This document shows positions 3,700 through 63,743 of a stretch of 64,000 nucleotides of DNA, in pieces. The first letter of the stretch is position 1. Each line of letters begins with the position of its first letter. A model generated the notes under the pieces. The model ran no database searches, was not told the origin of the DNA, and was given only the letters and a program-made list of their open reading frames with translations. The stretch covers positions 62,001 through 126,000 of the IMG/VR virus record IMGVR_UViG_3300037725_000018. One strand, given 5' to 3'. Position numbers and translations under genes: made by a program.

Positions 3700-4715
3700 C
3701 GTGAAGAGACTTTGAATCTATTTGTGTTAGGGCTAAAGTCTACCGTTCGCCCATCGATGTGTTCAAACTGAAACTCGATAGAATAAAACCGCTCGGGCTG
3801 TACGTTTTTTAAGTCCACGTCAAAAAAGTACCCGTCTTCACCGAAGCTACATTTTGACTGCTCGCTAAACGGAATAACCCTTCTTCCATTTCGAAGGTCT
3901 TTGATCTGGTATTTTAAGTCCCCGTTTTCGATTCTTACCGGATCTTTGTCTCTTTGAAATTCTTCGACAAATTGCTGCTTGATATACTTTTCTTTAACAC
4001 TTAAACGAAACCTTTTAATTCCGTTTGGTCGATAGGTTCCCTCAATGTTTTTGATTTGGATCGTGGGGTTTGAGCCAATTCCAATAGACGTGCCTACCGA
4101 CGTGTCAATAAACGAGTCGTCATACTTTACGACAAGCTCTGGCACGTAAATTGTGTGCGTCTTATTGCCGAAGTATTTTAGCTCGTAATCAGTTTCATCA
4201 AACTCCGGGTCAGACTTTAAAAGAAACCCGTGGTTTTCAATGACATTTTCGATCCAAGCCATTACAATTGTTGTAACATCTAAAACAACATCTGTGTCTT
4301 GAAATTCGTCAAACGTTTTGAAATTGCCAAATGAAGAAATGAAGTCTCCACCGGGAGAGTCCCAATCCTCCGGGCCTCTACTTTCCCAAGAGACGCCTTC
4401 GGTCGTTTGAGGCTCGTTAAACTTCCGTCCTCTTCCGCGCTCGAAGTCTTTTTCTAACGGATGCACGTCAATATCGTATTCTGCGGGAACGTTTGACGCT
4501 TCCACGGTGTAAAGACGTAAGTCGGCCTCGAACATTTGCCCGGAAATTCCGCTTCCAATATAATTTTCAACACGCTCTAAGTCAAACTTCGATACGATTC
4601 GGCGCTCGAATCCATTTTCTCTTCCAAGCTCTAAAACCTCGTTGACCCCCACGTTTTGCGTTGGCCTGTCTTCATAGAGGGTCGAGTCTTTAAGTGGATT
4701 TAAAAAATGATACAT
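3696..4715 (-). CDS. DNRLRE/CBM96-like domain structural protein
   Basis: KDSTLYE..N.G..E.LE, W...GGDF, DVT..V.AW....NHGFLLK and P.LVV motifs. Confidence 0.6.
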   Translation of the reverse strand: MYHFLNPLKDSTLYEDRPTQNVGVNEVLELGRENGFERRIVSKFDLERVENYIGSGISGQMFEADLRLYTVEASNVPAEYDIDVHPLEKDFERGRGRKFNEPQTTEGVSWESRGPEDWDSPGGDFISSFGNFKTFDEFQDTDVVLDVTTIVMAWIENVIENHGFLLKSDPEFDETDYELKYFGNKTHTIYVPELVVKYDDSFIDTSVGTSIGIGSNPTIQIKNIEGTYRPNGIKRFRLSVKEKYIKQQFVEEFQRDKDPVRIENGDLKYQIKDLRNGRRVIPFSEQSKCSFGEDGYFFDVDLKNVQPERFYSIEFQFEHIDGRTVDFSPNTNRFKVSSR

Positions 4716-7034: not shown

Positions 7035-7400
7035 TTACTCTTCTTCTAAAAATATTTGCATGAATTCAGATGTACCCGGCGTAAAGTCTGTCGTGAATTT
7101 TAGTTGAACCTCTACACCGTTTGTAACAAAATTGATTTGCAAGTTCTCAATTGTCAAATAGCTCATCCACCGCTCGGTTGCAGACCGAATTTCTTCTTCA
7201 ATCCGGTCGCGAGTCCTCTCGGTTTGATTCGAGTAGGTGAGCGTGTGAAGATTTGTTCCAAACTCCGGTTTCATAAGACGCTCTCCTTTCCGGGTAGAAA
7301 GAAGGTTAAACAGGTTGACACGGACCTGCTCTAGATCCGTGTCCGTCCTGTCAAAATATCCGTCTCGGCCTCTACGTAATGGATAATCCAGTCCAATCAT
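7035..7400 (-). CDS. Baseplate protein GPW/gp25 family
   Basis: NLLSTRKGERLMKPEFGTNL motif; adjacent to the gp6-like gene. Confidence 0.9.
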   Translation of the reverse strand: MIGLDYPLRRGRDGYFDRTDTDLEQVRVNLFNLLSTRKGERLMKPEFGTNLHTLTYSNQTERTRDRIEEEIRSATERWMSYLTIENLQINFVTNGVEVQLKFTTDFTPGTSEFMQIFLEEE

Positions 7401-21797: not shown

Positions 21798-22934
21798 TTA
21801 AAGAGTTCCTTCTGCAGCTTCAATGAGAACCTCTTTATCTTCGATTCCAGTTCGAAGCTGAAAGCTATGTGCCCGTTCGATCATTTCTCCAAACTTCGGG
21901 CCGGGTTTGTGCCCACGATCAATGAGGTCTTTCCCTTGAACAATCGGGTCAACTTCTACGCCTGTATCCCGAAACCACCGAAAATCTCCCAAACGAATGG
22001 CGCAAATAACCTTCTTAAAGTCTTTAAAGCGGTCTCCAAGTCTGTGTTGAAGCATTCTTACCTCAAAAGGGGTAGGGTTCGGGCTTGACGTTTGAATCGT
22101 TTCTAAACCCTTCTGGAAAGCCTTAACGCGACTTACCAAATTATTTGAAAGTTTGAGGCTTTCTCCAAGAGCCTCCGGGTCTTCCGCGTTTAAAAGAAAC
22201 GTTTCCATCCGGAGACGTTTCGGGGCCGAATCAATGGCAATCTTTCGAAAAACGTCCGTTTCCGGAAATCCAAAGTCTTCAAGAAGCCCAACCTTTTCCA
22301 TAATCGAAAGAAACCGGGAAGGTTTTTTGTCTTTAAACGCCTTCTTAACTTCCATGACCACCCGCTCGACGGAAACCACATTGGAAACGTCCGGGCCGAA
22401 TCGCTTCATCATTTGAAACGTTTCCGGTTCAATGTCAAACCCGAACCTTCCGGCAAACCGGGCTGCGCGAACAATCCGAAGGAGGTCTTCTTTGAACCTG
22501 CGCTTCGGAGCCCCAACGGTTTTTACAATGCCGTTTTGAAGGTTTTCTTTTCCCCCAAAGGGGTCAACAAGGTTTCCACTTGCGTCTATTGCCATTGCGT
22601 TGATTGTGAAGTCCCGGCGAGAAAGGTCCGTGGAAATGTCGTTTGCAAACTCTACGGTTGCTCTACGTCCATCAGTGGACACGTCCTTTCGAAAGGTTGT
22701 GATTTCAAACGGGAAACCATCGACCACGGCTGTAACTGTTCCGTGGTCTACCCCGGTCTTTTTGACGGGAACGCCTCTCTTCTCACACTTTTGAACCACA
22801 GTTTTCGGAACATCAGATGTTGCAAGATCAATGTCGTCAAACTCGCGGCCAAAAATTGAGTCCCGAACGCACCCGCCAACCGCATGAATATCGGAAAGAA
22901 AGTCAAACGTGTCAAGCGCCTCGTTTACTGTCAT
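21798..22934 (-). CDS. cca: tRNA nucleotidyltransferase (CCA-adding enzyme, class II)
   Basis: VGGCVRD, DIDLAT, EITTFR, DLSRRDFTINAMA, RFKEDLLRIVRAARF. Confidence 0.9.
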   Translation of the reverse strand: MTVNEALDTFDFLSDIHAVGGCVRDSIFGREFDDIDLATSDVPKTVVQKCEKRGVPVKKTGVDHGTVTAVVDGFPFEITTFRKDVSTDGRRATVEFANDISTDLSRRDFTINAMAIDASGNLVDPFGGKENLQNGIVKTVGAPKRRFKEDLLRIVRAARFAGRFGFDIEPETFQMMKRFGPDVSNVVSVERVVMEVKKAFKDKKPSRFLSIMEKVGLLEDFGFPETDVFRKIAIDSAPKRLRMETFLLNAEDPEALGESLKLSNNLVSRVKAFQKGLETIQTSSPNPTPFEVRMLQHRLGDRFKDFKKVICAIRLGDFRWFRDTGVEVDPIVQGKDLIDRGHKPGPKFGEMIERAHSFQLRTGIEDKEVLIEAAEGTL

Positions 22935-27263: not shown

Positions 27264-27419
27264 ATGTTTCCGTGAGACCTGTTTAACTAAAAACCCTTGC
27301 ACTCCCACAGGTCATGGGGGGACCAATTCGCCACGTTCGGTGACATAGCCGTATTCTTATCGACGGAAAGCGAAGATTTCGGCGTCGGGATTATCACGTG
27401 TCTACCAATAATATATAGC

Positions 27420-27557
27420 AGATTGCCAATTTTAACGCCTTATTTGGCGAATGCGTTTAAGTGTTTTCTTCACCTTTAAAAGAACTTTCAATCAAGTCCT
27501 TCTTGGAATCGAACCAAGGTATCCGTATATTTAAGGATAAATTGCTGTAGGCAATCT
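27420..27557 (-). ncRNA. ACAGCA-motif RNA 1 (Y-RNA-like, degenerate permuted tRNA domain)
   Basis: Stem AGATTGCC/GGCAATCT, TACAGCAA, T-arm CTTGG-TTCGATT-CCAAG followed by a closed acceptor-like hairpin. Confidence 0.7.
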
Positions 27558-27559
27558 TG

Positions 27560-27633
27560 CGATCCCTCCCGGATTCGAACCGGGGACCTCTTCCGTGACA
27601 GGGAAGCATCCTAAACCACTAGACCAAGGGACC
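27560..27633 (-). tRNA. tRNA-Asp(GTC)
   Basis: Cloverleaf, loop CTGTCAC. Confidence 0.92.
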
Positions 27634-27881
27634 GTTTCATTCTTCAATCGCTTCCATCCAAACGGACGGTTCGTTTACCGTAAACCGAACAACGGTTCCG
27701 TCTTCAAATTTTAATCGAACGATATTTCCAGAATTTGCAAACCGCTTTGTAATCGTTGTTGATTCAACGGTTTTTCCTTCCATCCAATCGGCAATTTCTT
27801 CTTGGTAGTTTGAAACCATCTTCTGTATATTTGTTAACAAAAGCGCAAAGAATTAGTTCCTACTTTATAGAACTTTAAAAC

Positions 27882-27943
27882 AAACTGCTTTTTCTTTTTT
27901 TTGATATATGTAATCAAAGAGAAAAGTTGCTGTTAGCAGCTTT
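27882..27943 (-). ncRNA. ACAGCA-motif RNA 2 (minimal, no tRNA domain)
   Basis: Stem AAGCTGC/GCAGTTT, TAACAGCAA, then a simple AT-rich hairpin. Confidence 0.6.
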
Positions 27944-27944
27944 G

Positions 27945-28018
27945 TGTGGGTGGTGGGGATCGAACCCACAGCCTCCTGCTTGGAAGGCAGGCTATCTAGC
28001 CAATTGATATACACCCAC
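27945..28018 (-). tRNA. tRNA-Gly(TCC)
   Basis: Cloverleaf, loop CTTCCAA. Confidence 0.9.
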
Positions 28019-28023
28019 AAAAC

Positions 28024-28139
28024 AGGCTACACAAGAAAAGTGTGCTACCATTACACCATACGGGTTAAACCCGCACTTGGATTCGAACCAAGACCTTCTG
28101 CTTATAGGCAGATAAAAGTATGTCTGCTGCAGGTAGCCC
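28024..28139 (-). ncRNA. ACAGCA-motif RNA 3 (circularly permuted tRNA-like domain)
   Basis: Stem GGGCTAC/GTAGCCT, CTGCAGCAG, anticodon-like hairpin, T-arm, acceptor TGCGGG/CCCGTA closed by TTTAA, D-arm GTGTAATGGTAGCAC. Confidence 0.8.
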
Positions 28140-28200
28140 TATGTTTATCGTACGTCTATATATAGACTTTAGAAGCACTTGGTTCCGTAAGTCTATATAT

Positions 28201-28467
28201 TCACTTGTTCTTAACTTGGACTACAACTTCGTCCGAGTTTGAAACATATGCGTAAATTGCATATCCTAAATTACCGAGACCGAATGTGAACCACACAGTT
28301 AGTATGAACCAGATGAAATGAACAAACCCGGACCCGTAACTGTTCTTTCTAACCCTAACGTGTTTATCACTTTGTTCGGATACGGAATAGCCTTGGATTT
28401 GGTAATCGTCTACTTTGTTGTGAAGTTCTTCTTCGGTAGAGACTTTTCTAATTCTAACGTTTGGCAT
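28201..28467 (-). CDS. Small membrane protein
   Basis: HFIWFILTVWFTFGLGNLGYAIY TM hairpin; own promoter. Confidence 0.65.
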   Translation of the reverse strand: MPNVRIRKVSTEEELHNKVDDYQIQGYSVSEQSDKHVRVRKNSYGSGFVHFIWFILTVWFTFGLGNLGYAIYAYVSNSDEVVVQVKNK

Positions 28468-28548
28468 AACTGTATTTTAGTTTATAAATGATAGGAAGTT
28501 AAAATTTAGATGAATATATTTGTTCATCTGTTACTTTTATGCTATTCG

Positions 28549-28621
28549 GGTGAGTATCCGGATTTGAACCGGAACTAAGGCGACCACAACGCCTCGTGCT
28601 ACCAATTACACCATACCCACC
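28549..28621 (-). tRNA. tRNA-His(GTG)
   Basis: Cloverleaf, G-1:C73, loop TTGTGGT. Confidence 0.92.
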
Positions 28622-28679
28622 ATGTTTGGCGATTGTTTCACGCCAAACCGTCGCACGCAACCACGTGAACGGAAATATG

Positions 28680-28753
28680 TAACACGGGTGGGACTCGAAC
28701 CCACTAAAGACAGCTTGAAAGACTGCCTACGCGACCGCTTTGTATTCCGTGTC
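28680..28753 (-). tRNA. tRNA-Glu(TTC)
   Basis: Cloverleaf, loop CTTTCAA, atypical A8A9 and D-arm. Confidence 0.82.
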
Positions 28754-28761
28754 AAATATTG

Positions 28762-28834
28762 CACGGGTACTAGGACTTGCACCTAGATCCCCGGTTTTGG
28801 AGACCGGGATGTTTCTAAATTCCACCATACCCGT
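28762..28834 (-). tRNA. tRNA-Trp(CCA)
   Basis: Cloverleaf, loop CTCCAAA, T-loop TGCAAGT. Confidence 0.85.
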
Positions 28835-28849
28835 GTACCAATTCTAATT

Positions 28850-29155
28850 CTAATAGTCTTCGAAGCGGTCGTGAACCTTAATCGGATCATCGGAAGGAAA
28901 CCGCTTGTCGCTGGAATAAATGAAGTTTCCACCGAACATCGGTCCCCGCTTTCCATCCGGAGTTTCAACCGGAACTGCGTACGTGACCGTTTTACCGAAC
29001 ACGGTCTTTTCGGCAATCCGAACGGCAGGGGAATCTTCGGAAGGCTCAAACGGCCCTTCGGCGTTTACGATTACAACCGAGTCAACACGGCTCGTAACAC
29101 CGCCGTTGGTCGTGTCCGCTCCGTTTCGAGAATAAACGTTTGCGCGAATACCCAT
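28850..29155 (-). CDS. Conserved phage hypothetical protein
   Basis: TNGGVT, MFGGNFIYSSD.RF and I.VHDRFE motifs; preceded by a GGAAC promoter. Confidence 0.75.
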   Translation of the reverse strand: MGIRANVYSRNGADTTNGGVTSRVDSVVIVNAEGPFEPSEDSPAVRIAEKTVFGKTVTYAVPVETPDGKRGPMFGGNFIYSSDKRFPSDDPIKVHDRFEDY

Positions 29156-29262
29156 AGCTTCAAGTGTCTTTGATTGGGGTTTCCTTTCTTAACTTCACTA
29201 TATTCAATGCAACGCAAAGGAATTGGTTCCGAAAGAAACGGCACTTCACAAAAGCTTCATAC

Positions 29263-29541
29263 TTACTCTGTGCTATCGGAAACTTCGTCAAACGCTTCAT
29301 CTAAACTCTGCTCTTCCGGAGAGGCAAAACCTTTTTCGTCGCCACTGCTTCTTACGTCCCGTTCAACGCGCCAAATGTCGTTTACAGGGTACTTATACAC
29401 TTTTCCGTTTAGGTCCTCGATGCAGTAAAAACTTCCTTTCTCGTACGTGTTAACCGCTCCGTGATAGACCTTTTGAAAAGAAGACTTCAATTGAACTTTT
29501 ACTGTATGTGTATCTTGTTTTTCGTAACTATGCTGACTCAT
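29263..29541 (-). CDS. Hypothetical protein
   Basis: NTYEKGSFYCI and KYPV..IWRV motifs. Confidence 0.6.
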   Translation of the reverse strand: MSQHSYEKQDTHTVKVQLKSSFQKVYHGAVNTYEKGSFYCIEDLNGKVYKYPVNDIWRVERDVRSSGDEKGFASPEEQSLDEAFDEVSDSTE

Positions 29542-29568
29542 ATTGGCTTTTTACTACGGGTGAATGTG

Positions 29569-29641
29569 TGGAGCCAGTCGGATTCGAACCGACAACTTGA
29601 ACCGTGCAAAAGTTCCGCTCTACCGTTAGAGCTATGGCCCC
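29569..29641 (-). tRNA. tRNA-Ala(TGC)
   Basis: G3:U70, loop TTTGCAC. Confidence 0.92.
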
Positions 29642-29708
29642 ATAAGTCAAGGGTGACTCTACCAAAGTCCATTTAATCGGCAACTTACCGACCCTTGAAA
29701 AATAAAAC

Positions 29709-29829
29709 AGACTGCAATTGATTTAGTGCTCTGCCAGTTGAGCTACCCGTCCAAAAGCGGACGGGGTAGGACTCGAACCTACAACCTCTCCTTCCATGTA
29801 GGATATCAATGGATTGCTGTATGCAGCCT
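29709..29829 (-). ncRNA. ACAGCA-motif RNA 4 (circularly permuted tRNA-like domain)
   Basis: Stem AGGCTGCA/TGCAGTCT, TACAGCAA, T-arm GTAGG-TTCGAGT-CCTAC, acceptor CCCGTCC/GGACGGG closed by GCTTTT, then TA-GCTC-AACTGGCA-GAGC D-arm. Confidence 0.85.
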
Positions 29830-29902
29830 TGGAAATCAACATTTCTTTTTTATCTTGGCACTATTATATATGCTCTATCTATGTAAATGTTTCAAGTTTC
29901 CC

Positions 29903-31560: not shown

Positions 31561-32220
31561 TCACCCGTACTGGCTTACGCCTTCAAACATATCATACCGA
31601 AGCTTCGCATATGGAAGTGTGTCGATATCGGAAGGCTTAGGATGGGTGAACATGATTCCTTCTACATAGGCATTGTTTTCATGCGCCTCTTGAAAAGACG
31701 TTCCGTGAAACGTCGAATAAAACAGAGGAATCAACCCGTTTTCAAACCAGCTTTCAATTGCGTCGAACGTCTTCGGGTACTTTCCCCAACTTTCGTATTG
31801 AAGCTTTCTTCGGCTATAAGAGCTAAAAGGAATCCAGATGTGTTCGTTTAGGTCATAAGGGTTTCCTTGAACTTTCGGGCCAACGACTTCCCCAAAGTGT
31901 TGACCGTCTGTTAGCGTTTCAACATACCCACGATCTACAGAATTTCGAATTGCATCTGTGATCCTACGGTCCCCATGAAAAGCAGGAACCCGGTTCTTTC
32001 GGTTCATAACTTGAACAATTTGCCCGTTTTGAATCAAAACAGACACGTTTGTTCCGTCAATTTTTTCAATTGCCATTGTACGCGGATCATTAAAAACCCA
32101 ATCGTAGCTATTGCCGTTGTCGTCTGTGTTTACTTCGTCAACGACAAAGTATCCACCGTTTCGCTCTTCACGAACAAACGGCGAATGAATCTTCGGCATG
32201 TCTCGCATAAAAGACTGCAT
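31561..32220 (-). CDS. RNA ligase-like nucleotidyltransferase (start moved off the tRNA-Ile overlap)
   Basis: EKIDGTN (KxDG), GEVVGPKVQGNP, EGIMF and AKLR ligase motifs. Confidence 0.8.
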   Translation of the reverse strand: MQSFMRDMPKIHSPFVREERNGGYFVVDEVNTDDNGNSYDWVFNDPRTMAIEKIDGTNVSVLIQNGQIVQVMNRKNRVPAFHGDRRITDAIRNSVDRGYVETLTDGQHFGEVVGPKVQGNPYDLNEHIWIPFSSYSRRKLQYESWGKYPKTFDAIESWFENGLIPLFYSTFHGTSFQEAHENNAYVEGIMFTHPKPSDIDTLPYAKLRYDMFEGVSQYG

Positions 32221-32269
32221 ATAGAATTGACGTAGCCTTTTAATTAAGCAAATATAAAGAGAGTTTTTG

Positions 32270-32343
32270 TTGTCCCGGTAGGATTTGAACCTACGGCACA
32301 CGATGTATCAGACCGATGCTCTACCAGACTGAGCTACGGGACA
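32270..32343 (-). tRNA. tRNA-Ile(GAT)
   Basis: Cloverleaf, loop CTGATAC. Confidence 0.88.
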
Positions 32344-35702: not shown

Positions 35703-35856
35703 GAGAATGTTGCATCCACCACCTTAGCGGGATTCGAACCCGCGACTACCGCAATCTAGCGCGGCACTCTGACCTACCTGAGTTATAAGGTGTCACCAAC
35801 GGCGGTGGGATTCGAACCCACAGATACCGATCAAGCACCGTTACAGCAACATTCTC
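35703..35856 (-). ncRNA. Double tRNA-like RNA enclosed in an 11-bp stem
   Basis: GAGAATGTTGC/GCAACATTCTC encloses an anticodon-less mini-tRNA and a cloverleaf (35719-35792) with a 6-nt loop. Confidence 0.7.
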
Positions 35857-37734: not shown

Positions 37735-38187
37735 CTAGTTTCGTGAAGCTTTTGTGAACGTTACGTTAGAAAGGTCAACACTTGAACCTTTTAGATACCC
37801 CTTCAAAACTTCTTTGCTTGGCTCGTCACAAGAGTAACGGATCTCTACTTCTCCGTGCTTTTTGACCTCATCTACAACGCCGGAAAACGAATTCGCAGAA
37901 TCAATGCTGTCAAAAAAGATCACTTCTGGCTCGTCTTCAACAAACCGAACGTCTTCGATGCTTTCAGGGAAGTATCCACCCCCGGTCATTTCACGAGATG
38001 AAAACCATCTATAACTCACTTCTTTTTCTTCGTAAGAAGAGACGTTGCCGTTAGCCTTTTCTAAAATAATGTTCATCATTCTAGAAATTGCTAGATCATC
38101 ATAATCGTAAACGAGATACCCGTCTACGTAGACCGCGTTCCAACTATCAGAAAATACTCGCACTATATCGTGACCCTCATTTTTCAT
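37735..38187 (-). CDS. Hypothetical protein
   Basis: 150-aa ORF in operon. Confidence 0.6.
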   Translation of the reverse strand: MKNEGHDIVRVFSDSWNAVYVDGYLVYDYDDLAISRMMNIILEKANGNVSSYEEKEVSYRWFSSREMTGGGYFPESIEDVRFVEDEPEVIFFDSIDSANSFSGVVDEVKKHGEVEIRYSCDEPSKEVLKGYLKGSSVDLSNVTFTKASRN

Positions 38188-40336: not shown

Positions 40337-41812
40337 TTACACGCGAACCATGTCGTAACGATCATCCATGATCGTATTCAACGTAATTTGAATCGGGGTA
40401 ATGTTTTGGCCGGAAAGAATGTTCTTCATAATTGACGGGCTAAATCCGCTCACAAGAGCAGCTCCGCTTTCGGAAAACCGAACCGGATTATTCCCGCTAT
40501 CATCTAGGTTCCAAAACACAATGTTTGGGGCTTCGTATCCAGCTTTTTCGTACTTCTCCCGGACCATGTTCATCGCAGACACCGAACGCCCATCAATATT
40601 GTATGAATCAAACTGCATGTCGGACATAACAAGAATTGTTTCCGGCATTTGGTTTTCGGGTACGTTTCTGCTTTTTGCAAAGGAAAGCAAGCTTTCAAAC
40701 ATCGCAGAAATGTTTGTATTCATTCCCCAAGAAATTTCGTTTAGGCTTTCTACCCGATCTCGGAGATTTGAGCCTCCGATTTCAACGAAACTTGGGTTTT
40801 CGCTAAACGTCACAACCCGGTTTTGAAATGGTCCGGTGTTGTGCTCTGCCGTGTAAAGTCCAAGCCCGATAGCAACGTCAATCGGCCTTGTGGACGAGTT
40901 AGAGTTATAGGAAGCAGTCATGCTTCCGGACACGTCAACAACGGATAGAACATTATCTTCCATCCACACAGGAAGGTTCTTCCACTGCCCTTCAAGTTGC
41001 TTTAGCTCTTTGTCTCCGATAGAAGAGCCGCTTCCAAAAGCATTTCGGGATTGAAGAATGGGCTTGACAATTTCATGTGGAAAAATCGCCCCCGCACTCA
41101 TTTTTGTGTCTGTAGATTCGTCAAGCACGTCGTCTAGGTAAGCTTCAAAACGATCTTCGTCGTTTCGAACAAATGCATTCCGATACTTCCGGATTGCTTG
41201 AGATGGAACAGACTCGTAATCAATGCTATCCCAATTTTCTTCGCACATGTCCTGTTCAACTACGTCACGAAGACCGGACACAAGCTTTCTGTACCGCTTA
41301 GAGCGGTTTCCTACACTTCCACTATCAAACATGTGGTCACGGAGATCCGTAAACATGTCGTGGTCGGACTTGCCTTCAGACGGTGCCCACTTCGCCGCAA
41401 GACTGTCTCCGGACTCCAAGGCTTTTTCATAAAAATTCAAAGCGTCTTCATACACTTCGGTTCCCTTCGTTGAGTGAAGAACATCGTCCCAACGCCCGTA
41501 TTCGGGAATTAGATCAAGGTTTTTTCGGGCCGTTTCTGGATCGTTCTCTGCAAGCCACCGGAACATAATCCGAAACGTTCGCCGCTCTCCTTGTCCCCCG
41601 CGAATGTCGCGGTTATAGAAAAGTGACCGAAGAGCACCTTCCTTCGTTTCTTGATACGCCTTTCGAAAAAGGTCTTCGATGTATTCCGGGTCTTTTGAGC
41701 GAGACGCGCCCATAGAGAAGAAAAGATCCACAAGGTCTTTGCCGCTTGTGGAATGGGTCTTCATCCCATTTTCGGTCGTCTCGTCGTAAATTCCGGTTAG
41801 AATCTTGTTCAT
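40337..41812 (-). CDS. DUF2828-family helical plus vWA protein (Ro60/TROVE-like architecture)
   Basis: TTENGM, RDIRGGQGER, YGRWDD, AKWAP, MIDAS DVSGSM, WGMNTN, SDMQFD, VFWNL, VSGFSP. Confidence 0.9.
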   Translation of the reverse strand: MNKILTGIYDETTENGMKTHSTSGKDLVDLFFSMGASRSKDPEYIEDLFRKAYQETKEGALRSLFYNRDIRGGQGERRTFRIMFRWLAENDPETARKNLDLIPEYGRWDDVLHSTKGTEVYEDALNFYEKALESGDSLAAKWAPSEGKSDHDMFTDLRDHMFDSGSVGNRSKRYRKLVSGLRDVVEQDMCEENWDSIDYESVPSQAIRKYRNAFVRNDEDRFEAYLDDVLDESTDTKMSAGAIFPHEIVKPILQSRNAFGSGSSIGDKELKQLEGQWKNLPVWMEDNVLSVVDVSGSMTASYNSNSSTRPIDVAIGLGLYTAEHNTGPFQNRVVTFSENPSFVEIGGSNLRDRVESLNEISWGMNTNISAMFESLLSFAKSRNVPENQMPETILVMSDMQFDSYNIDGRSVSAMNMVREKYEKAGYEAPNIVFWNLDDSGNNPVRFSESGAALVSGFSPSIMKNILSGQNITPIQITLNTIMDDRYDMVRV

Positions 41813-47346: not shown

Positions 47347-48184
47347 TTTGTTTGTGATATGTATACACGCTTTATGCAAAAAAATCAAGCACAAGAAGCG
47401 TCATGGCAATTGAAGTTTGCCCGTTCCAGTAAAAGTACAAAGCGATGTTTTCTACGATGTAAGTGCTGTAGCTTTCGATTGTCTTAATCATCGGTTTTCG
47501 TTTTTTGTTGTGAAAGGCTCTCTCTATTTGTTTGTAACTACGCTCCTTCTTCAATGTTCCACCGGACAATCATTTCACAAAAGGGGTGAAAGAATCATAA
47601 GCTCTTTAATTTTTTCCGGGTTCAAGGTCGTTTCGTAAACTTTTTCCCACTTATCTGCGTACCTAACTTTTCTTTTGGGCACATTGATGATTATGTCCAC
47701 AAAATCGAAGTCTTCATCATCGTATGCGGCGGGGTTTGACTTCGTTTTTTGTTCGTAAAGGCCCCGGTTTGACCGGACACAAGAAGCCTCTTTTTTGTCT
47801 TCGATCAAAATGAGCATTTTCTACATCACTCTTGTAAGTAGCCAAAGCTTAACAGGGCCTTCAAAATAGTCAAGGTGCTCTAACGTTTCTTTTACCTCTT
47901 CTTTAACCCGTTCAAGTTTATCAATTGAATATCCAACATCTTCGTCTTCGGTGTACTTAGACCTACCGCTTAGATGTTTTCCAATGTACACGTCTTTTGA
48001 ATCGTGTCCCCGGTGTGGTTCCCCGTAAAAAACGGCTGTGTACCCGTCTAAATCGTCATTATCTTCAATGTCCGGGTAGTAAAGGTTATCGTAATCCTCT
48101 CTGCTGTCGTTTTCTATCTTTACGCCTACCAAAAGCGTATGCCGTTTATACATTCCCATAGCTTTGAAAACCGTTTGTGTTTAT

Positions 48185-59064: not shown

Positions 59065-59709
59065 CTATTTATTAAGCTCGTTTGGTTCAACCTCTTTTCG
59101 AAGCCAATCTTCATCGGTTTGCACGTGATCGGGACGAACCCATTTCGCTAAATGCAGACTAAAGTCTTCAAAATCAAACCCCGAAACAGTTCGCATTACA
59201 TAACCCTCTACCGGATCTTCGGATGTTTCATTCAAACGCTTCTCGTTGAACTTTCGGATCTTACTTTCATCATACATCCCCCGCCAAATAACAGGGACGT
59301 GATTTAAATCCAAGAGGCCACACCACTCCACAGTTTTATCCCAACTTAGGCACTTGTTTTCTTCGTTCCAAATGGAAAACACGTAGAAGTATGAATCCAG
59401 ATTTTCATACTTGATGGAGTGTTTTGCGTACACGTTTTCCCCACAAATTCGCCACCCGTCCGGAAGTTGGTGCCCAACCCTTCCGGCTGTCTTTCCTGCC
59501 CATGTGCGGGAGGGGTGATACGGCGTCTGTAGGCTTCGTGCATGGTATTCGCCGTTGGAGTAGATGGTTGTGTTTTCACCGTCCATCTTCTCCGTTAAAA
59601 TGACTTCACGGCCTTCAAAAAAGCTAACGTCTTCATGGTAATCATCGTCTCTGTGCTTTTCAGGAGACCACGGAACGTGTTTGGTTGAAGGGTACTTTTG
59701 CTTTTTCAT
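59065..59709 (-). CDS. RNA ligase (Rnl2-like nucleotidyltransferase domain)
   Basis: KYPSTKHVPWS, TEKMDGEN, GEN, FYVFSIW, EGYV and AKWVR motifs. Confidence 0.88.
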   Translation of the reverse strand: MKKQKYPSTKHVPWSPEKHRDDDYHEDVSFFEGREVILTEKMDGENTTIYSNGEYHARSLQTPYHPSRTWAGKTAGRVGHQLPDGWRICGENVYAKHSIKYENLDSYFYVFSIWNEENKCLSWDKTVEWCGLLDLNHVPVIWRGMYDESKIRKFNEKRLNETSEDPVEGYVMRTVSGFDFEDFSLHLAKWVRPDHVQTDEDWLRKEVEPNELNK

Positions 59710-59875
59710 GGGTCTAACTTTAAAATGAGCCTTCTTACTACTTCGGGTTTTTGTGTTGAAGCTTCTCTGTTGCAAATGTAAACCGAATCCGTGTCGTATG
59801 TAAAAAACTTCGTGGCAACGGACTTGTTCCTAGCAACAACAACGATCATGTTATTTAAATTTCAACCAGACACTT

Positions 59876-63280: not shown

Positions 63281-63329
63281 AGAATATAGACATTAATATT
63301 TGAATTGAAAACAGATAAAAATTTTATAG

Positions 63330-63743
63330 TGGACCCGGCGGGATTCGAACCCGCGTCCGCAGCACCTTTGCAACATCGGTTGTCACAGTCTTAGAATGGT
63401 CTTTATTTTTGACCGACAGACTATTGTATTAGACCACACAAAAGTTTGTGGGTTTTATTTCAACCCGCTATCGGACTTGTTTTACGTTCTGCCTACCAAG
63501 CAAAACAAGTTGAAGCCCAGTAGGAATATCCGATGGTGTGTGCCTTACTCTCTATCGGAGTCGAGAAGTAAGGCTGCAGTTACGCCGCAAGAGAAGCGCC
63601 GAAGTGCTCCTCCATGTTGACGCCTGCAGGAACGCGGTTAACGTTGCCAAGTATTGATTCCGTCAGTTATTTTATGCCCACCTAACGGTAAGGGCAGACT
63701 GCCGACCTTGCTCCGCGTGCTACGTCGAAGCCGTGTCAGGCCC
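63330..63743 (-). ncRNA. ssrA: tmRNA
   Basis: 5' GGGCCTGACACGGCTTCGAC, 3' GGACGCGGGTTCGAATCCCGCCGGGTCCA, G3:U70; tag frame 63648-63580 GNVNRVPAGVNMEEHFGASLAA*. Confidence 0.92.

What the first reader, a model, noticed from the sequence alone, without database searches (positions are those of the whole stretch)
27420..29829. Family of four ACAGCA-motif RNAs carrying circularly permuted tRNA domains: candidate new Y-RNA class
Seen: four elements among the tRNAs (27420-27557, 27882-27943, 28024-28139, 29709-29829) share a 7-8 bp terminal stem of different sequence, followed on the 5' strand by an unpaired (U/C)(A/G)CAGCA motif. In 28024 and 29709 the payload is a tRNA in permuted order: anticodon-like hairpin, variable loop, T-arm, acceptor stem sealed by a short loop, U8-R9, D-arm. 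Element 27420 is a degenerate version and 27882 is motif only. Known: bacterial YrlA Y RNAs join a Ro60-binding stem to a T-arm/closed-acceptor/D-arm tRNA mimic. Differences here: another conserved motif, a retained anticodon-like hairpin, and multiple modular payloads. Inference: a protein-binding handle presents interchangeable tRNA-shaped decoys or adaptors.
Basis: partly seen in the sequence, partly recalled or inferred. Interest (0 to 1): 0.9.

Follow-up and report, generated by a model that had tools for sequence, protein, structure and literature searches.

The report
Phage Y-like RNAs for Ro60-like protein
The four flagged sequences are real members of a widespread, apparently undescribed family of small phage RNAs that share a conserved "handle" and sit beside genes for a Ro60-shaped protein (DUF2828), so they are most likely that protein's own version of Y RNAs, often carrying tRNA-shaped cargo.

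Summary
All four elements lie on the minus strand, the strand of the tRNAs. Each has a 7-8 bp terminal stem followed by unpaired N-(A/G)CAGCA(A/G). E3 and E4 carry a circularly permuted tRNA body.

A covariance model built only from other phages ranks these four as the top four hits in the window. The same handle occurs in multiple copies in many uncultured phage contigs. It also occurs in cultured phages of Escherichia, Listeria, Staphylococcus, Enterococcus, Bacillus, Campylobacter and Mycobacterium. There it is always on the same strand as a DUF2828/DUF7788 gene and usually within a few hundred bases of it.

The window's DUF2828 protein (40337-41812, minus) is predicted to fold like Ro60. 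Canonical YrlA-type RNAs instead sit beside TROVE genes. No Rfam family reaches its threshold; YrlA scores 29-48 bits against a cut-off of 69.

Best reading: a new Y-RNA-like class in which a DUF2828-binding handle presents tRNA-like or hairpin cargo. Binding, expression and function are untested.

One lead remains open: the handle closely resembles dictyostelid Class I RNAs.

The parts
29706..29830 (-). E4. Handle (8 bp plus UACAGCAAUCC bulge), 6-bp second stem, 7-nt-loop hairpin, T arm, closed 7-bp acceptor, U-A, D arm. Long, permuted-tRNA class.
   Evidence: Fold. YrlA RF02553 alignment at 40.5 bits, below the cut-off of 69. R1 22.5 bits and R2 21.4 bits. Aligned with 16 homologues in which the T, acceptor and D stems covary.
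28021..28140 (-). E3. Handle GGGCUAC/GUAGCCU plus CUGCAGCAG, hairpin, T arm, closed acceptor (3-nt loop), D arm. It ends 2-5 nt before tRNA-Gly(UCC).
   Evidence: Sequence. R2 12.8 bits, rank 4 in the window. Its handle is shared with L001 2990-3105(-). Weakest member.
27879..27943 (-). E2. Short class: handle plus AACAGCAAC plus a plain A/U-rich hairpin. It starts directly after tRNA-Gly(UCC).
   Evidence: Fold. R2, which contains no window sequence, scores it 43.0 bits, E 2.6e-6.
27417..27558 (-). E1. Handle plus UACAGCAAUU, then hairpin, canonical T arm, 8-bp closed stem and two further hairpins (a degenerate tRNA-like payload). It starts 1-2 nt after tRNA-Asp.
   Evidence: Fold z-score -3.8. 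R2 27.1 bits, E 0.004.
40337..41812 (-). DUF2828 + DUF7788/vWA protein (491 aa): predicted Ro60-fold protein and candidate partner of the handle.
   Evidence: Pfam E 1.6e-41 and 1.2e-52. AF2 model pLDDT 87.5. The top 8 Foldseek PDB hits are all Ro60/TROVE. hhalign against a TROVE profile gives 97% probability.
27944..28018 (-). tRNA-Gly(UCC), flanked directly by E3 upstream and E2 downstream. Its processing would define E3's 3' end and E2's 5' end.
   Evidence: for position. The processing role is inferred.
27559..27633 (-). tRNA-Asp(GUC), immediately upstream of E1.
21798..22934 (-). CCA-adding enzyme (context: RNA maturation and repair genes in the same region).
   Evidence: Pfam PolyA_pol E 1.2e-27.
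31561..32301 (-). RNA ligase family protein (context).
   Evidence: Pfam PF09414 E 6.4e-8.

Best explanation
The four elements are small non-coding RNAs of a conserved phage family.

How they are made (inferred): they are transcribed with the tRNA array and released by tRNA-processing cuts.

Two modules:
1. A handle. It is a 7-10 bp terminal stem whose sequence varies but whose pairing is kept. Its ends are conserved, (A)AGR at the 5' end and YCU at the 3' end, followed by G/U-U. An unpaired N-ACAGCAA-Y stretch follows directly after the 5' strand. An A-rich stretch often lies before the 3' strand.
2. A variable payload. It can be a plain hairpin (E2), a degenerate tRNA-like body (E1) or a circularly permuted tRNA body with a sealed acceptor stem (E3, E4). 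In other phages it can also be a native-order tRNA body or a whole tRNA.

Proposed mechanism: the handle is the docking site for the phage's DUF2828/vWA protein, which has the ring-plus-vWA fold of Ro60. Together they form a Ro60/Y-RNA-like particle. The payload, which cannot be aminoacylated when the acceptor is sealed, then acts as an adaptor or decoy. It would bring the ring to tRNA-recognising factors, or divert them. Candidates are processing and repair enzymes or host anticodon nucleases.

Shown:
- the family exists;
- the stem covaries;
- the RNAs lie next to DUF2828 genes on the same strand;
- the protein's predicted fold is that of Ro60;
- they are distinct from TROVE-linked YrlA.

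Inferred:
- direct binding;
- release by tRNA processing;
- the adaptor or decoy role;
- any link to counter-defence.
For: 1. Family. Model R1 finds 42 hits at E<=0.1 in 987 kb, confined to 14 of 100 loci. Model R2, built without window sequences, puts the four elements at ranks 1-4 in the window.

2. RNA-level pairing. Of 447 stem cells, 94.4% are paired against 67% in shuffles. There are 128 double-change cells against 34. Slid controls give 33-49%. G-U pairs are present and hits fall only on the tRNA strand.

3. Partner.
- tblastn of the window's DUF2828 protein hits 6 of 121 loci, and all 6 have handle RNAs beside the gene. Fisher p = 2e-4.
- In 6 of 7 cultured phages sampled, 2-6 hits lie next to the DUF2828 gene. 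All 21 hits with E<=0.5 are on its strand.
- Bas63 gp130 is a DUF2828 homologue (37% identity, E 5e-96). Handle RNAs lie 0.3-1.2 kb downstream of it.

4. Fold. The AF2 model has pLDDT 87.5. Its top 8 PDB matches are all Ro60/TROVE (E 7e-9 to 4e-6, TM 0.45-0.63). hhalign against a TROVE profile gives 97%.

5. Specificity. All 8 TROVE-positive ORFs found beside canonical-handle permuted-tRNA RNAs (9 such ORFs were tested; the other, in L014, is a helicase) sit in loci with no handle hits.

6. Precedent. Rsr/Ro60 with YrlA (tRNA-like) and YrlB (PMC4201824). Bas63 gp130 was reported as Ro60-like, as a counter to the Ppl defence, and as possibly paired with undetected Y RNAs among its tRNAs (bioRxiv 10.1101/2024.10.10.617714).
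Against: - No expression, end-mapping or binding data exist for any member.
- In this window the DUF2828 gene is 10.5-13 kb from the RNAs, not adjacent.
- KVP40 has the gene but only a weak hit (15.8 bits) in the 9.4 kb examined.
- E3 scores poorly and E4 only marginally.
- In the preprint, gp130 countered Ppl when expressed in a T7 context without the Bas63 tRNA array. The protein may therefore act without these RNAs.
- Some payloads are complete tRNAs. This fits a role for the handle in precursor handling at least as well as a decoy role.
- Stem statistics come from alignments selected or fitted for pairing.
Confidence: 0.7

Rival explanations
1. They are ordinary members of the known YrlA / Y RNA family and bind a canonical Ro60 (TROVE) protein.
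For: RF02553 aligns E4 end to end at 40.5 bits, local E 5e-8. It also hits long-class relatives at 29-48 bits. The T arm, closed acceptor and D arm are laid out as in YrlA.
Against: - Every hit is below the gathering score of 69, and the score comes from the tRNA-like part.
- E1, E2, E3 and all short-class members get no YrlA hit.
- The handle differs from the canonical one seen next to TROVE genes.
- No TROVE domain was found among the 20 largest ORFs of the window.
- The neighbouring gene elsewhere is DUF2828, not TROVE.
Confidence: 0.07
2. They are tRNA precursors. The handle is a leader-trailer pairing that directs cutting and, for the permuted ones, re-ligation by the phage RNA ligases. 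The permuted genes would then mature into working tRNAs, as in permuted tRNA genes of red algae.
For: - Some relatives nest a complete, high-scoring tRNA in the handle: L049 8868-8938 at 63 bits and 7282-7355 at 52 bits.
- Many anticodon-like hairpins in relatives have a canonical 7-nt loop with U33.
- The window encodes two RNA ligase family proteins and a CCA-adding enzyme.
Against: - The short class (E2 and dozens of relatives) has no tRNA part at all, yet keeps the handle.
- In E4 the hairpin loop is ACAUGGA, with no U33. In E3 the loop has 6 nt.
- Joining the ends would not restore an anticodon stem, because a second helix and the motif lie between them.
- No bulge-helix-bulge motif is present.
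Confidence: 0.1
3. They are cis-acting elements of the DUF2828 or tRNA operon, such as autoregulatory protein-binding sites or processing and stability signals, rather than free-standing trans-acting RNAs.
For: They are tightly adjacent to the gene and on its strand in most phages. No terminators or strong promoters of their own were detected around the window's copies.
Against: - There are many copies per genome, spread among the tRNAs.
- In the window they lie 10-13 kb from the gene.
- Closed terminal stems with conserved ends that abut tRNA ends suggest excised, stable RNAs.
- This rival still implies that the protein binds the handle.
Confidence: 0.1
4. They are DNA-level repeats, such as miniature inverted-repeat elements or recombination scars from tandem tRNA genes, with no RNA function.
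For: They have terminal inverted repeats, occur in multiple copies and lie within recombination-prone tRNA arrays. The permuted layout could arise from two adjacent tRNA copies.
Against: - Stem sequences differ between copies while pairing is kept.
- G-U pairs occur.
- Hits fall on one strand only.
- The single-stranded motif is conserved across phages of Firmicutes, Actinobacteria, Proteobacteria and Campylobacter.
- No target-site duplications were seen.
Confidence: 0.03

Closest known systems
Bacterial Y RNAs YrlA and YrlB with Rsr/Ro60 (Rfam RF02553; Chen et al. 2014, PMC4201824)
   Same: - A terminal-stem protein-binding module is joined to a tRNA-like module with T arm, loop-closed acceptor and D arm.
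- Shorter sibling RNAs lack the tRNA part.
- The RNAs are encoded next to a ring-plus-vWA protein gene and are also found in phages.
- E4 aligns over the full YrlA model.
   Different: - The handle's sequence and shape differ: a one-sided ACAGCAA bulge and AGR/YCU ends.
- The neighbouring protein is DUF2828/DUF7788, not Pfam TROVE.
- Scores stay below the family threshold.
- There are many more copies per genome, and payloads include native-order and complete tRNAs.
- The RNAs are embedded in phage tRNA arrays.
Dictyostelid Class I RNAs (Rfam RF01414; Kjellin et al. 2021, PMC7919456)
   Same: - About 60 nt long and multi-copy.
- Start AAG and end CUGU.
- A 6-bp terminal stem is conserved in pairing but not in sequence.
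- An 11-nt motif, CCUUACAGCAA, follows directly after the 5' strand, and the rest is variable.
- The window's copies read cAAG-stem-(U/C)UACAGCAA ... stem-CUGU.
- RF01414 gives its only phage hits exactly on these elements: E1 17.9 bits, E4 13.2 bits, L087 4528-4582 29.4 bits.
   Different: - All scores are below the gathering score of 41.5, and most phage elements are not hit at all.
- The organisms are eukaryotic, with their own promoter element.
- The known direct binder is the RRM protein Rnp1A.
- I could not test whether dictyostelids encode a DUF2828 protein.
Bas63 gp130 'Ro60-like' counter-defence protein (PhageMaP preprint, 10.1101/2024.10.10.617714)
   Same: gp130 belongs to the same protein family as the window's DUF2828 protein. 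The authors guessed that some 'tRNA genes' downstream might be Y RNAs. The handle RNAs found here lie in exactly that stretch.
   Different: The preprint did not identify the RNAs. The elements are not the annotated tRNAs: they lie in the gaps between them and under small 'hypothetical protein' calls on the opposite strand.
T4 stable RNAs species 1 and 2 (rnaC, rnaD)
   Same: They are small stable RNAs of unknown function inside a phage tRNA cluster.
   Different: The handle model does not match them (best hit in the T4 region 13.3 bits, located elsewhere).

Membership tests
YrlA (Rfam RF02553) | Score at or above the curated gathering score (69 bits). | tested here: not met
   E4 scores 40.5 bits. 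E1, E2 and E3 get no hit. Relatives score 24-48 bits.
YrlA (Rfam RF02553) | tRNA-like module: T arm, loop-closed acceptor stem, U8-R9, D arm. | tested here: met
   Present in E4 and E3. The stems covary across 17 homologues. E1 meets it only in part. E2 does not.
YrlA (Rfam RF02553) | Encoded near, and bound by, a TROVE-domain Ro60 orthologue. | tested here: not met
   No TROVE domain in the 20 largest ORFs of the window. Elsewhere the neighbouring gene is DUF2828. TROVE genes neighbour a different handle type. Binding cannot be tested with these tools.
Ro60 / TROVE protein family (for the DUF2828 protein) | Pfam TROVE (PF05731) sequence match. | tested here: not met
   Only DUF2828, DUF7788 and a weak VWA_2 match. 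No PDB sequence hit.
Ro60 / TROVE protein family (for the DUF2828 protein) | Alpha-helical repeat ring followed by a vWA domain with a metal-binding motif (the Ro60 fold). | tested here: met
   The Foldseek top 8 hits are all Ro60, aligned over about 510-570 columns. hhalign gives 97% over the end of TROVE plus vWA. D293, S295, S297, T366 and D398 are invariant; reading them as a DxSxS-type metal site is my inference. This rests on a predicted model, not a solved structure.
Dicty_Class_I_RNA (Rfam RF01414) | Score at or above the gathering score (41.5 bits). | tested here: not met
   Scores of 13.2, 17.9 and 29.4 bits on three elements. No hits on six cultured-phage loci.
Dicty_Class_I_RNA (Rfam RF01414) | AAG start, short covarying terminal stem, ...UACAGCAA motif next to the 5' strand, CUGU end, about 60 nt. 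| tested here: met
   Read directly in E1, E2 and E4 and, with one change, in E3. The definition is from PMC7919456. Only the short class matches the size.
Dicty_Class_I_RNA (Rfam RF01414) | Dictyostelid origin with the DUSE promoter element about 60 nt upstream. | tested here: not met
   The window is a 223-kb phage contig with a tmRNA and 40 tRNAs. No search for a DUSE-like motif was run.
Permuted tRNA genes that mature into tRNAs | Joining the transcript's ends restores a continuous, canonical tRNA; a processing motif lies at the junction. | tested here: not met
   In E4 a 6-bp helix, an 11-nt motif and the 8-bp stem lie between the D arm and the hairpin. The hairpin loops are non-canonical in E3 and E4.
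New handle-RNA family defined here (models R1 and R2) | Covarying terminal stem plus ACAGCAA-type 5' bulge, scored by a model that contains no window sequence. | tested here: met
   The four elements are ranks 1-4 in the window. E3 is weak, at E 2.8.
New handle-RNA family defined here (models R1 and R2) | A DUF2828 gene in the same genome. | tested here: met
   Window 40337-41812.

The most novel reading that the evidence does not exclude
The handle (AAG, covarying stem, UACAGCAA bulge, CUGU end) may be an ancient, portable docking signal for DUF2828-type Ro60-like proteins in both viruses and eukaryotes. The abundant Class I RNAs of dictyostelid amoebae, whose function and main partner are still unclear and which were thought unique to that group, would then be the eukaryotic counterpart of these phage RNAs. 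A DUF2828 protein would be their missing partner. DUF2828 genes are reported in plants and other eukaryotes. I did not verify whether dictyostelids have one.
Probability: 0.25. Interest if true: 0.9.

Novelty: new variant of a known kind. Interest (0 to 1): 0.82.

Why it matters
DUF2828 proteins are very common in large phages. They occur in 711 of 50,697 phage records and gave more than 5,000 database hits. These include Felix O1-like, Listeria, Staphylococcus, Campylobacter and mycobacterial phages used in research and therapy. Yet the protein has no known ligand.

One member, Bas63 gp130, has been reported to overcome a bacterial defence system. Finding the RNA half of the particle has three consequences:
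- It turns a 'domain of unknown function' into a testable ribonucleoprotein.
- It explains unannotated gaps, and spurious small ORFs, in phage tRNA arrays.
- It shows that the Ro60/Y-RNA design, a ring protein plus a modular RNA with a tRNA mimic, has at least two parallel versions with different docking codes.

The variety of payloads offers a natural experiment on what tRNA mimicry is for. The resemblance to dictyostelid Class I RNAs, if real, would link a phage system to a long-standing eukaryotic puzzle.

Tried and rejected
- A simple stem-plus-CAGCA descriptor is not specific. 7-bp closures occur at 17% of control sites and at 40% if G-U pairs are freely allowed. Extra window candidates at 48114, 37917 and 23912 lie in coding sequence and were dropped.
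- Close relatives of this phage could not be found, so E1-E4 could not be compared with their orthologues. Neighbouring small proteins are not conserved in LR756508.1. A protein-anchored scan returned only the same contig plus distant, non-syntenic hits.
- T4 rnaC and rnaD are not members.
- The Rfam Class I model does not generalise to phage elements.
- PDB sequence searches with the DUF2828 protein and with its profile found nothing. Only the fold comparison worked.
- Literature searches for DUF2828, UCP015417, PF11443, Ro-like phage proteins and Y RNAs in phage tRNA clusters found no description of these RNAs. Avesson et al. 2011, which reports the four Class I-binding proteins, and the supplements of Chen et al. 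2014 were not available.
- The promoter and terminator scan around the elements was uninformative.
- I could not determine whether dictyostelids encode DUF2828.
Full report
**Setting**

The window is part of a 223,357-bp uncultured phage contig, IMGVR_UViG_3300037725_000018. It carries 40 tRNA genes and a tmRNA, all on the minus strand, and has no close relative among deposited phages.

Pfam finds several RNA-related genes in the tRNA-rich stretch:
- a CCA-adding enzyme at 21798-22934;
- two RNA-ligase family proteins at 31561-32301 and 59065-59775;
- a 491-aa DUF2828 + DUF7788/vWA protein at 40337-41812.

**The observation**

| Element | Coordinates | Terminal stem | What follows the 5' strand | Position |
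|---|---|---|---|---|
| E4 | 29829->29709 | AGGCUGCA / UGCAGUCU | UACAGCAAUCC | 67 nt before tRNA-Ala |
| E3 | 28139->28024 | GGGCUAC / GUAGCCU | CUGCAGCAG | ends 2-5 nt before tRNA-Gly |
| E2 | 27943->27882 | AAGCUGCU / AGCAGUUU | AACAGCAAC | starts right after tRNA-Gly |
| E1 | 27557->27420 | AGAUUGCC / GGCAAUCU | UACAGCAAU | starts 1-2 nt after tRNA-Asp |

Three of the four stems contain a G-U pair, which would be a mismatch on the other strand.

Folding results:
- E4's minimum-free-energy fold is exactly the proposed one: stem, 11-nt one-sided bulge, 6-bp helix, hairpin with a 7-nt loop, T arm, 7-bp acceptor closed by a 6-nt loop, U-A, D arm.
- E1 has a canonical T arm and a closed 8-bp stem among other hairpins (z-score -3.8).
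- E2 is the handle plus one A/U-rich hairpin.

**Is it more than chance?**

A bare stem-plus-CAGCA descriptor is not convincing. It finds 12 sites against 5.4 in shuffles, and a 7-bp closure is found at 17% of control sites. Related sequences settle the matter.

A collection scan for the permuted order alone (T loop, 20-32 nt, D arm) used neither motif nor handle in the pattern. It returned 120 phage loci. Most are tandem tRNAs. The true permuted-tRNA RNAs fall into two handle types:
- one with canonical YrlA-like handles;
- one with the window's handle (L001/LR756508.1, L008, L012, L024, L037, L049, L074, L098, L113).

These loci carry several further copies each, including many 55-80 nt elements built like E2.

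Model R1 was built from 23 short elements. It finds 42 hits at E<=0.1 in 987 kb, confined to 14 loci.

On 56 distinct hits the terminal stem behaves as follows:
- 94.4% of cells are paired, against 67% after shuffling;
- there are 128 double-change cells, against 34;
- with the partner slid by 1-3 columns, pairing falls to 33-49%.

These alignments were selected or fitted for pairing, which inflates the numbers, but the contrast is large.

Model R2 was rebuilt from 61 hits and contains no window sequence. It ranks E2, E1, E4 and E3 as hits 1-4 of the whole window on both strands, at 43.0, 27.1, 21.4 and 12.8 bits. E3 is marginal on its own. It shares its handle with an LR756508.1 element that has the full motif.

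For the long class, 17 aligned members show compensatory changes in the T stem, the 8-bp closed acceptor and the D stem.

**What sits next to the RNAs**

In the loci from the collection scan:
- tblastn with the window's DUF2828 protein hits only 6 of the 121 loci.
- In all 6, handle RNAs lie beside the gene on the same strand, often within 80-320 nt.
- The association of the gene with R1 hits is 5 of 6 loci against 13 of 115 (p = 2e-4). The 'negative' loci are only fragments of their contigs.

As a control, 8 of 9 ORFs tested beside canonical-handle RNAs are Pfam TROVE proteins (the ninth, in L014, is a helicase). Those loci have no handle hits.

The protein is common: 711 phage records contain it. 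I fetched about 9 kb around the gene in seven cultured phages and searched with filters off. The model found 2-6 hits directly next to the gene in six of them:
- Staphylococcus phage S-CoN_Ph8;
- Bacillus phage FADO;
- Campylobacter phage NCTC12673;
- Listeria phage AG20;
- Mycobacterium phage Clautastrophe;
- Enterococcus phage iF6.

All 21 hits with E<=0.5 are on the gene's strand. KVP40 gave only a weak hit.

Each positive phage has short members, and at least four of them (Bacillus FADO, Enterococcus iF6, Mycobacterium Clautastrophe, and Bas63 below) also have a long permuted-tRNA member. This mirrors YrlB and YrlA.

In E. coli phage Bas63 (MZ501086), gp130 is a DUF2828 homologue (37% identity, E 5e-96). 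At least four handle RNAs lie 0.3-1.2 kb downstream of it. They sit in gaps of the tRNA array and under small opposite-strand 'hypothetical protein' calls.

**The protein**

Sequence searches against solved structures find nothing. An AlphaFold2 model from a 34-sequence alignment is confident (pLDDT 87.5, pTM 0.85).

Its eight best PDB matches are all Ro60/TROVE proteins: frog, human, Deinococcus Rsr and Thermus phage phiLo Ro60. They align over about 510-570 columns, with E from 7e-9 to 4e-6 and TM 0.45-0.63.

A profile-profile comparison with TROVE proteins from the control loci gives 97% probability over the end of the TROVE region and the vWA domain.

Invariant residues D293, S295, S297, T366 and D398 fit an intact metal-binding site in the vWA domain. 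This is my inference. Many invariant Arg and Lys residues lie in the helical part.

Annotators already label mycobacteriophage homologues 'Ro-like RNA binding protein' and RefSeq labels the family 'RNA-binding protein'.

**How it most likely works**

The shown facts fit a Ro60/Y-RNA-type particle with a different docking code.
- The ring-shaped DUF2828 protein would bind the handle, that is, the covarying stem with conserved end pairs plus the single-stranded ACAGCAA.
- The rest of the RNA would be cargo.
- The cargo is often tRNA-shaped but cannot be charged, because the acceptor end is sealed or replaced by the handle. In relatives it frequently keeps a canonical anticodon loop.

An adaptor or decoy for tRNA-recognising proteins is therefore the most economical reading.

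The position of E3, tRNA-Gly and E2, and of tRNA-Asp and E1, suggests release by RNase P and 3' tRNA processing. This is inferred.

A preprint reports that Bas63 gp130 counters the Ppl defence system. It speculated about undetected Y RNAs among the downstream tRNAs. That gives a possible biological role. However, gp130 worked there in a T7 background, so the RNAs may not be required for that effect.

The permuted layout could have arisen from two tandem copies of one tRNA gene captured between handle halves. This too is inference.

**Rivals**

- Ordinary YrlA: not supported by score, handle or neighbouring gene.
- Permuted tRNA precursors that mature into tRNAs: contradicted by the short class, and by the extra helix and motif between the D arm and the hairpin. 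Complete tRNAs nested in handles in L049 keep a precursor-handling role alive.
- Cis-regulatory sites: possible alongside the main reading.
- DNA repeats: unlikely, given covariation, G-U pairs and strand specificity.

**Comparison with known families**

The closest known system is Rsr/Ro60 with YrlA and YrlB (PMC4201824). These RNAs work like it by every structural criterion I could test, but they fail its membership tests: score, TROVE partner and handle.

Unexpectedly, the handle matches the published definition of dictyostelid Class I RNAs almost point for point (PMC7919456):
- start AAG;
- a 6-bp stem conserved in pairing only;
- the motif CCUUACAGCAA right after the 5' strand;
- a variable remainder;
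- end CUGU;
- about 60 nt;
- many copies.

The Rfam Class I model's only hits in these phage sequences fall on handle RNAs. They are weak (13-29 bits against a threshold of 41.5) and most elements are missed. I could not check whether dictyostelids have a DUF2828 gene. This stays a lead.

**Novelty**

Searches of the available literature found no description of these RNAs. Rfam 15 has no family that reaches threshold on them.

The kind of system, a Ro60-like ring with a modular Y RNA that includes a tRNA mimic, is known. The docking motif, the protein family and the range of payloads are new. I therefore rate it a new variant of a known kind, of high interest because it is widespread, present in tractable laboratory phages and immediately testable.

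Noticed in passing
window 28158-28165 (-), 27411-27418 (-), 8180, 12180, 36318, 46601, 57103, 58082 (all -): The octamer CTATATAT occurs 10 times against 0.32 expected, 8 of them on the minus (gene) strand and apparently in intergenic spots. One lies 19 nt upstream of E3 and one just after E1. It is a candidate phage promoter element, which would give E3 its own transcription start.
   Followed up: partly
window 35719-35792 (-): ARAGORN reports a tRNA of undetermined identity with a two-base 'anticodon (ag)'. Rfam scores it as a tRNA at 50.2 bits. It may be an unusual anticodon loop or a tRNA-like RNA.
   Followed up: no
L037 5852-6477 (-), L049 7558-8229 (+), L054 1898-2494 (-); L049 12269-12780 (+): ROOL RNAs (296-323 bits) and a GOLLD RNA (152.8 bits) lie in the same phage tRNA arrays as the handle RNAs. 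Several large and small structured RNAs therefore share this genomic niche.
   Followed up: no
L122 (Bas63) 37749-37901 and 37913-38023 (-); L128 (Staphylococcus phage S-CoN_Ph8) 5471-5560 and 5690-5818: Small annotated 'hypothetical protein' CDSs overlap handle RNAs and are probably mis-annotations. In Bas63 they lie on the opposite strand.
   Followed up: partly
L049 7258-7371 and 8842-8951 (+); L043 135-234 (-); L086 6807-6900 (+): Some family members enclose a complete, high-scoring tRNA (52-63 bits), or a native-order tRNA body that lacks only the acceptor stem, inside the handle. The handle therefore tolerates any topology of tRNA cargo.
   Followed up: partly
L043 2485-2850 (-), L086 11228-11566 (+); window 63327-63743 (-): Phage-encoded tmRNAs, of the two-piece 'permuted' type in L043 and L086, accompany these tRNA arrays. 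The window's tmRNA encodes a 22-residue tag.
   Followed up: no
L124 (Listeria phage AG20) 6755-8062; window 31561-32301 and 59065-59775: RNA ligase or 'tRNA splicing ligase' genes lie within a few kb of the DUF2828 gene in Listeria phage AG20, and two RNA-ligase family genes lie in the window. This echoes the Ro60-RtcB association seen in bacteria.
   Followed up: no
L163 (T4) about 4060-4085 (-), within rnaD: T4 species 2 RNA contains ...CACAGCAGAAAC... near its 3' part but lacks the handle geometry. It is not a member by the model.
   Followed up: yes
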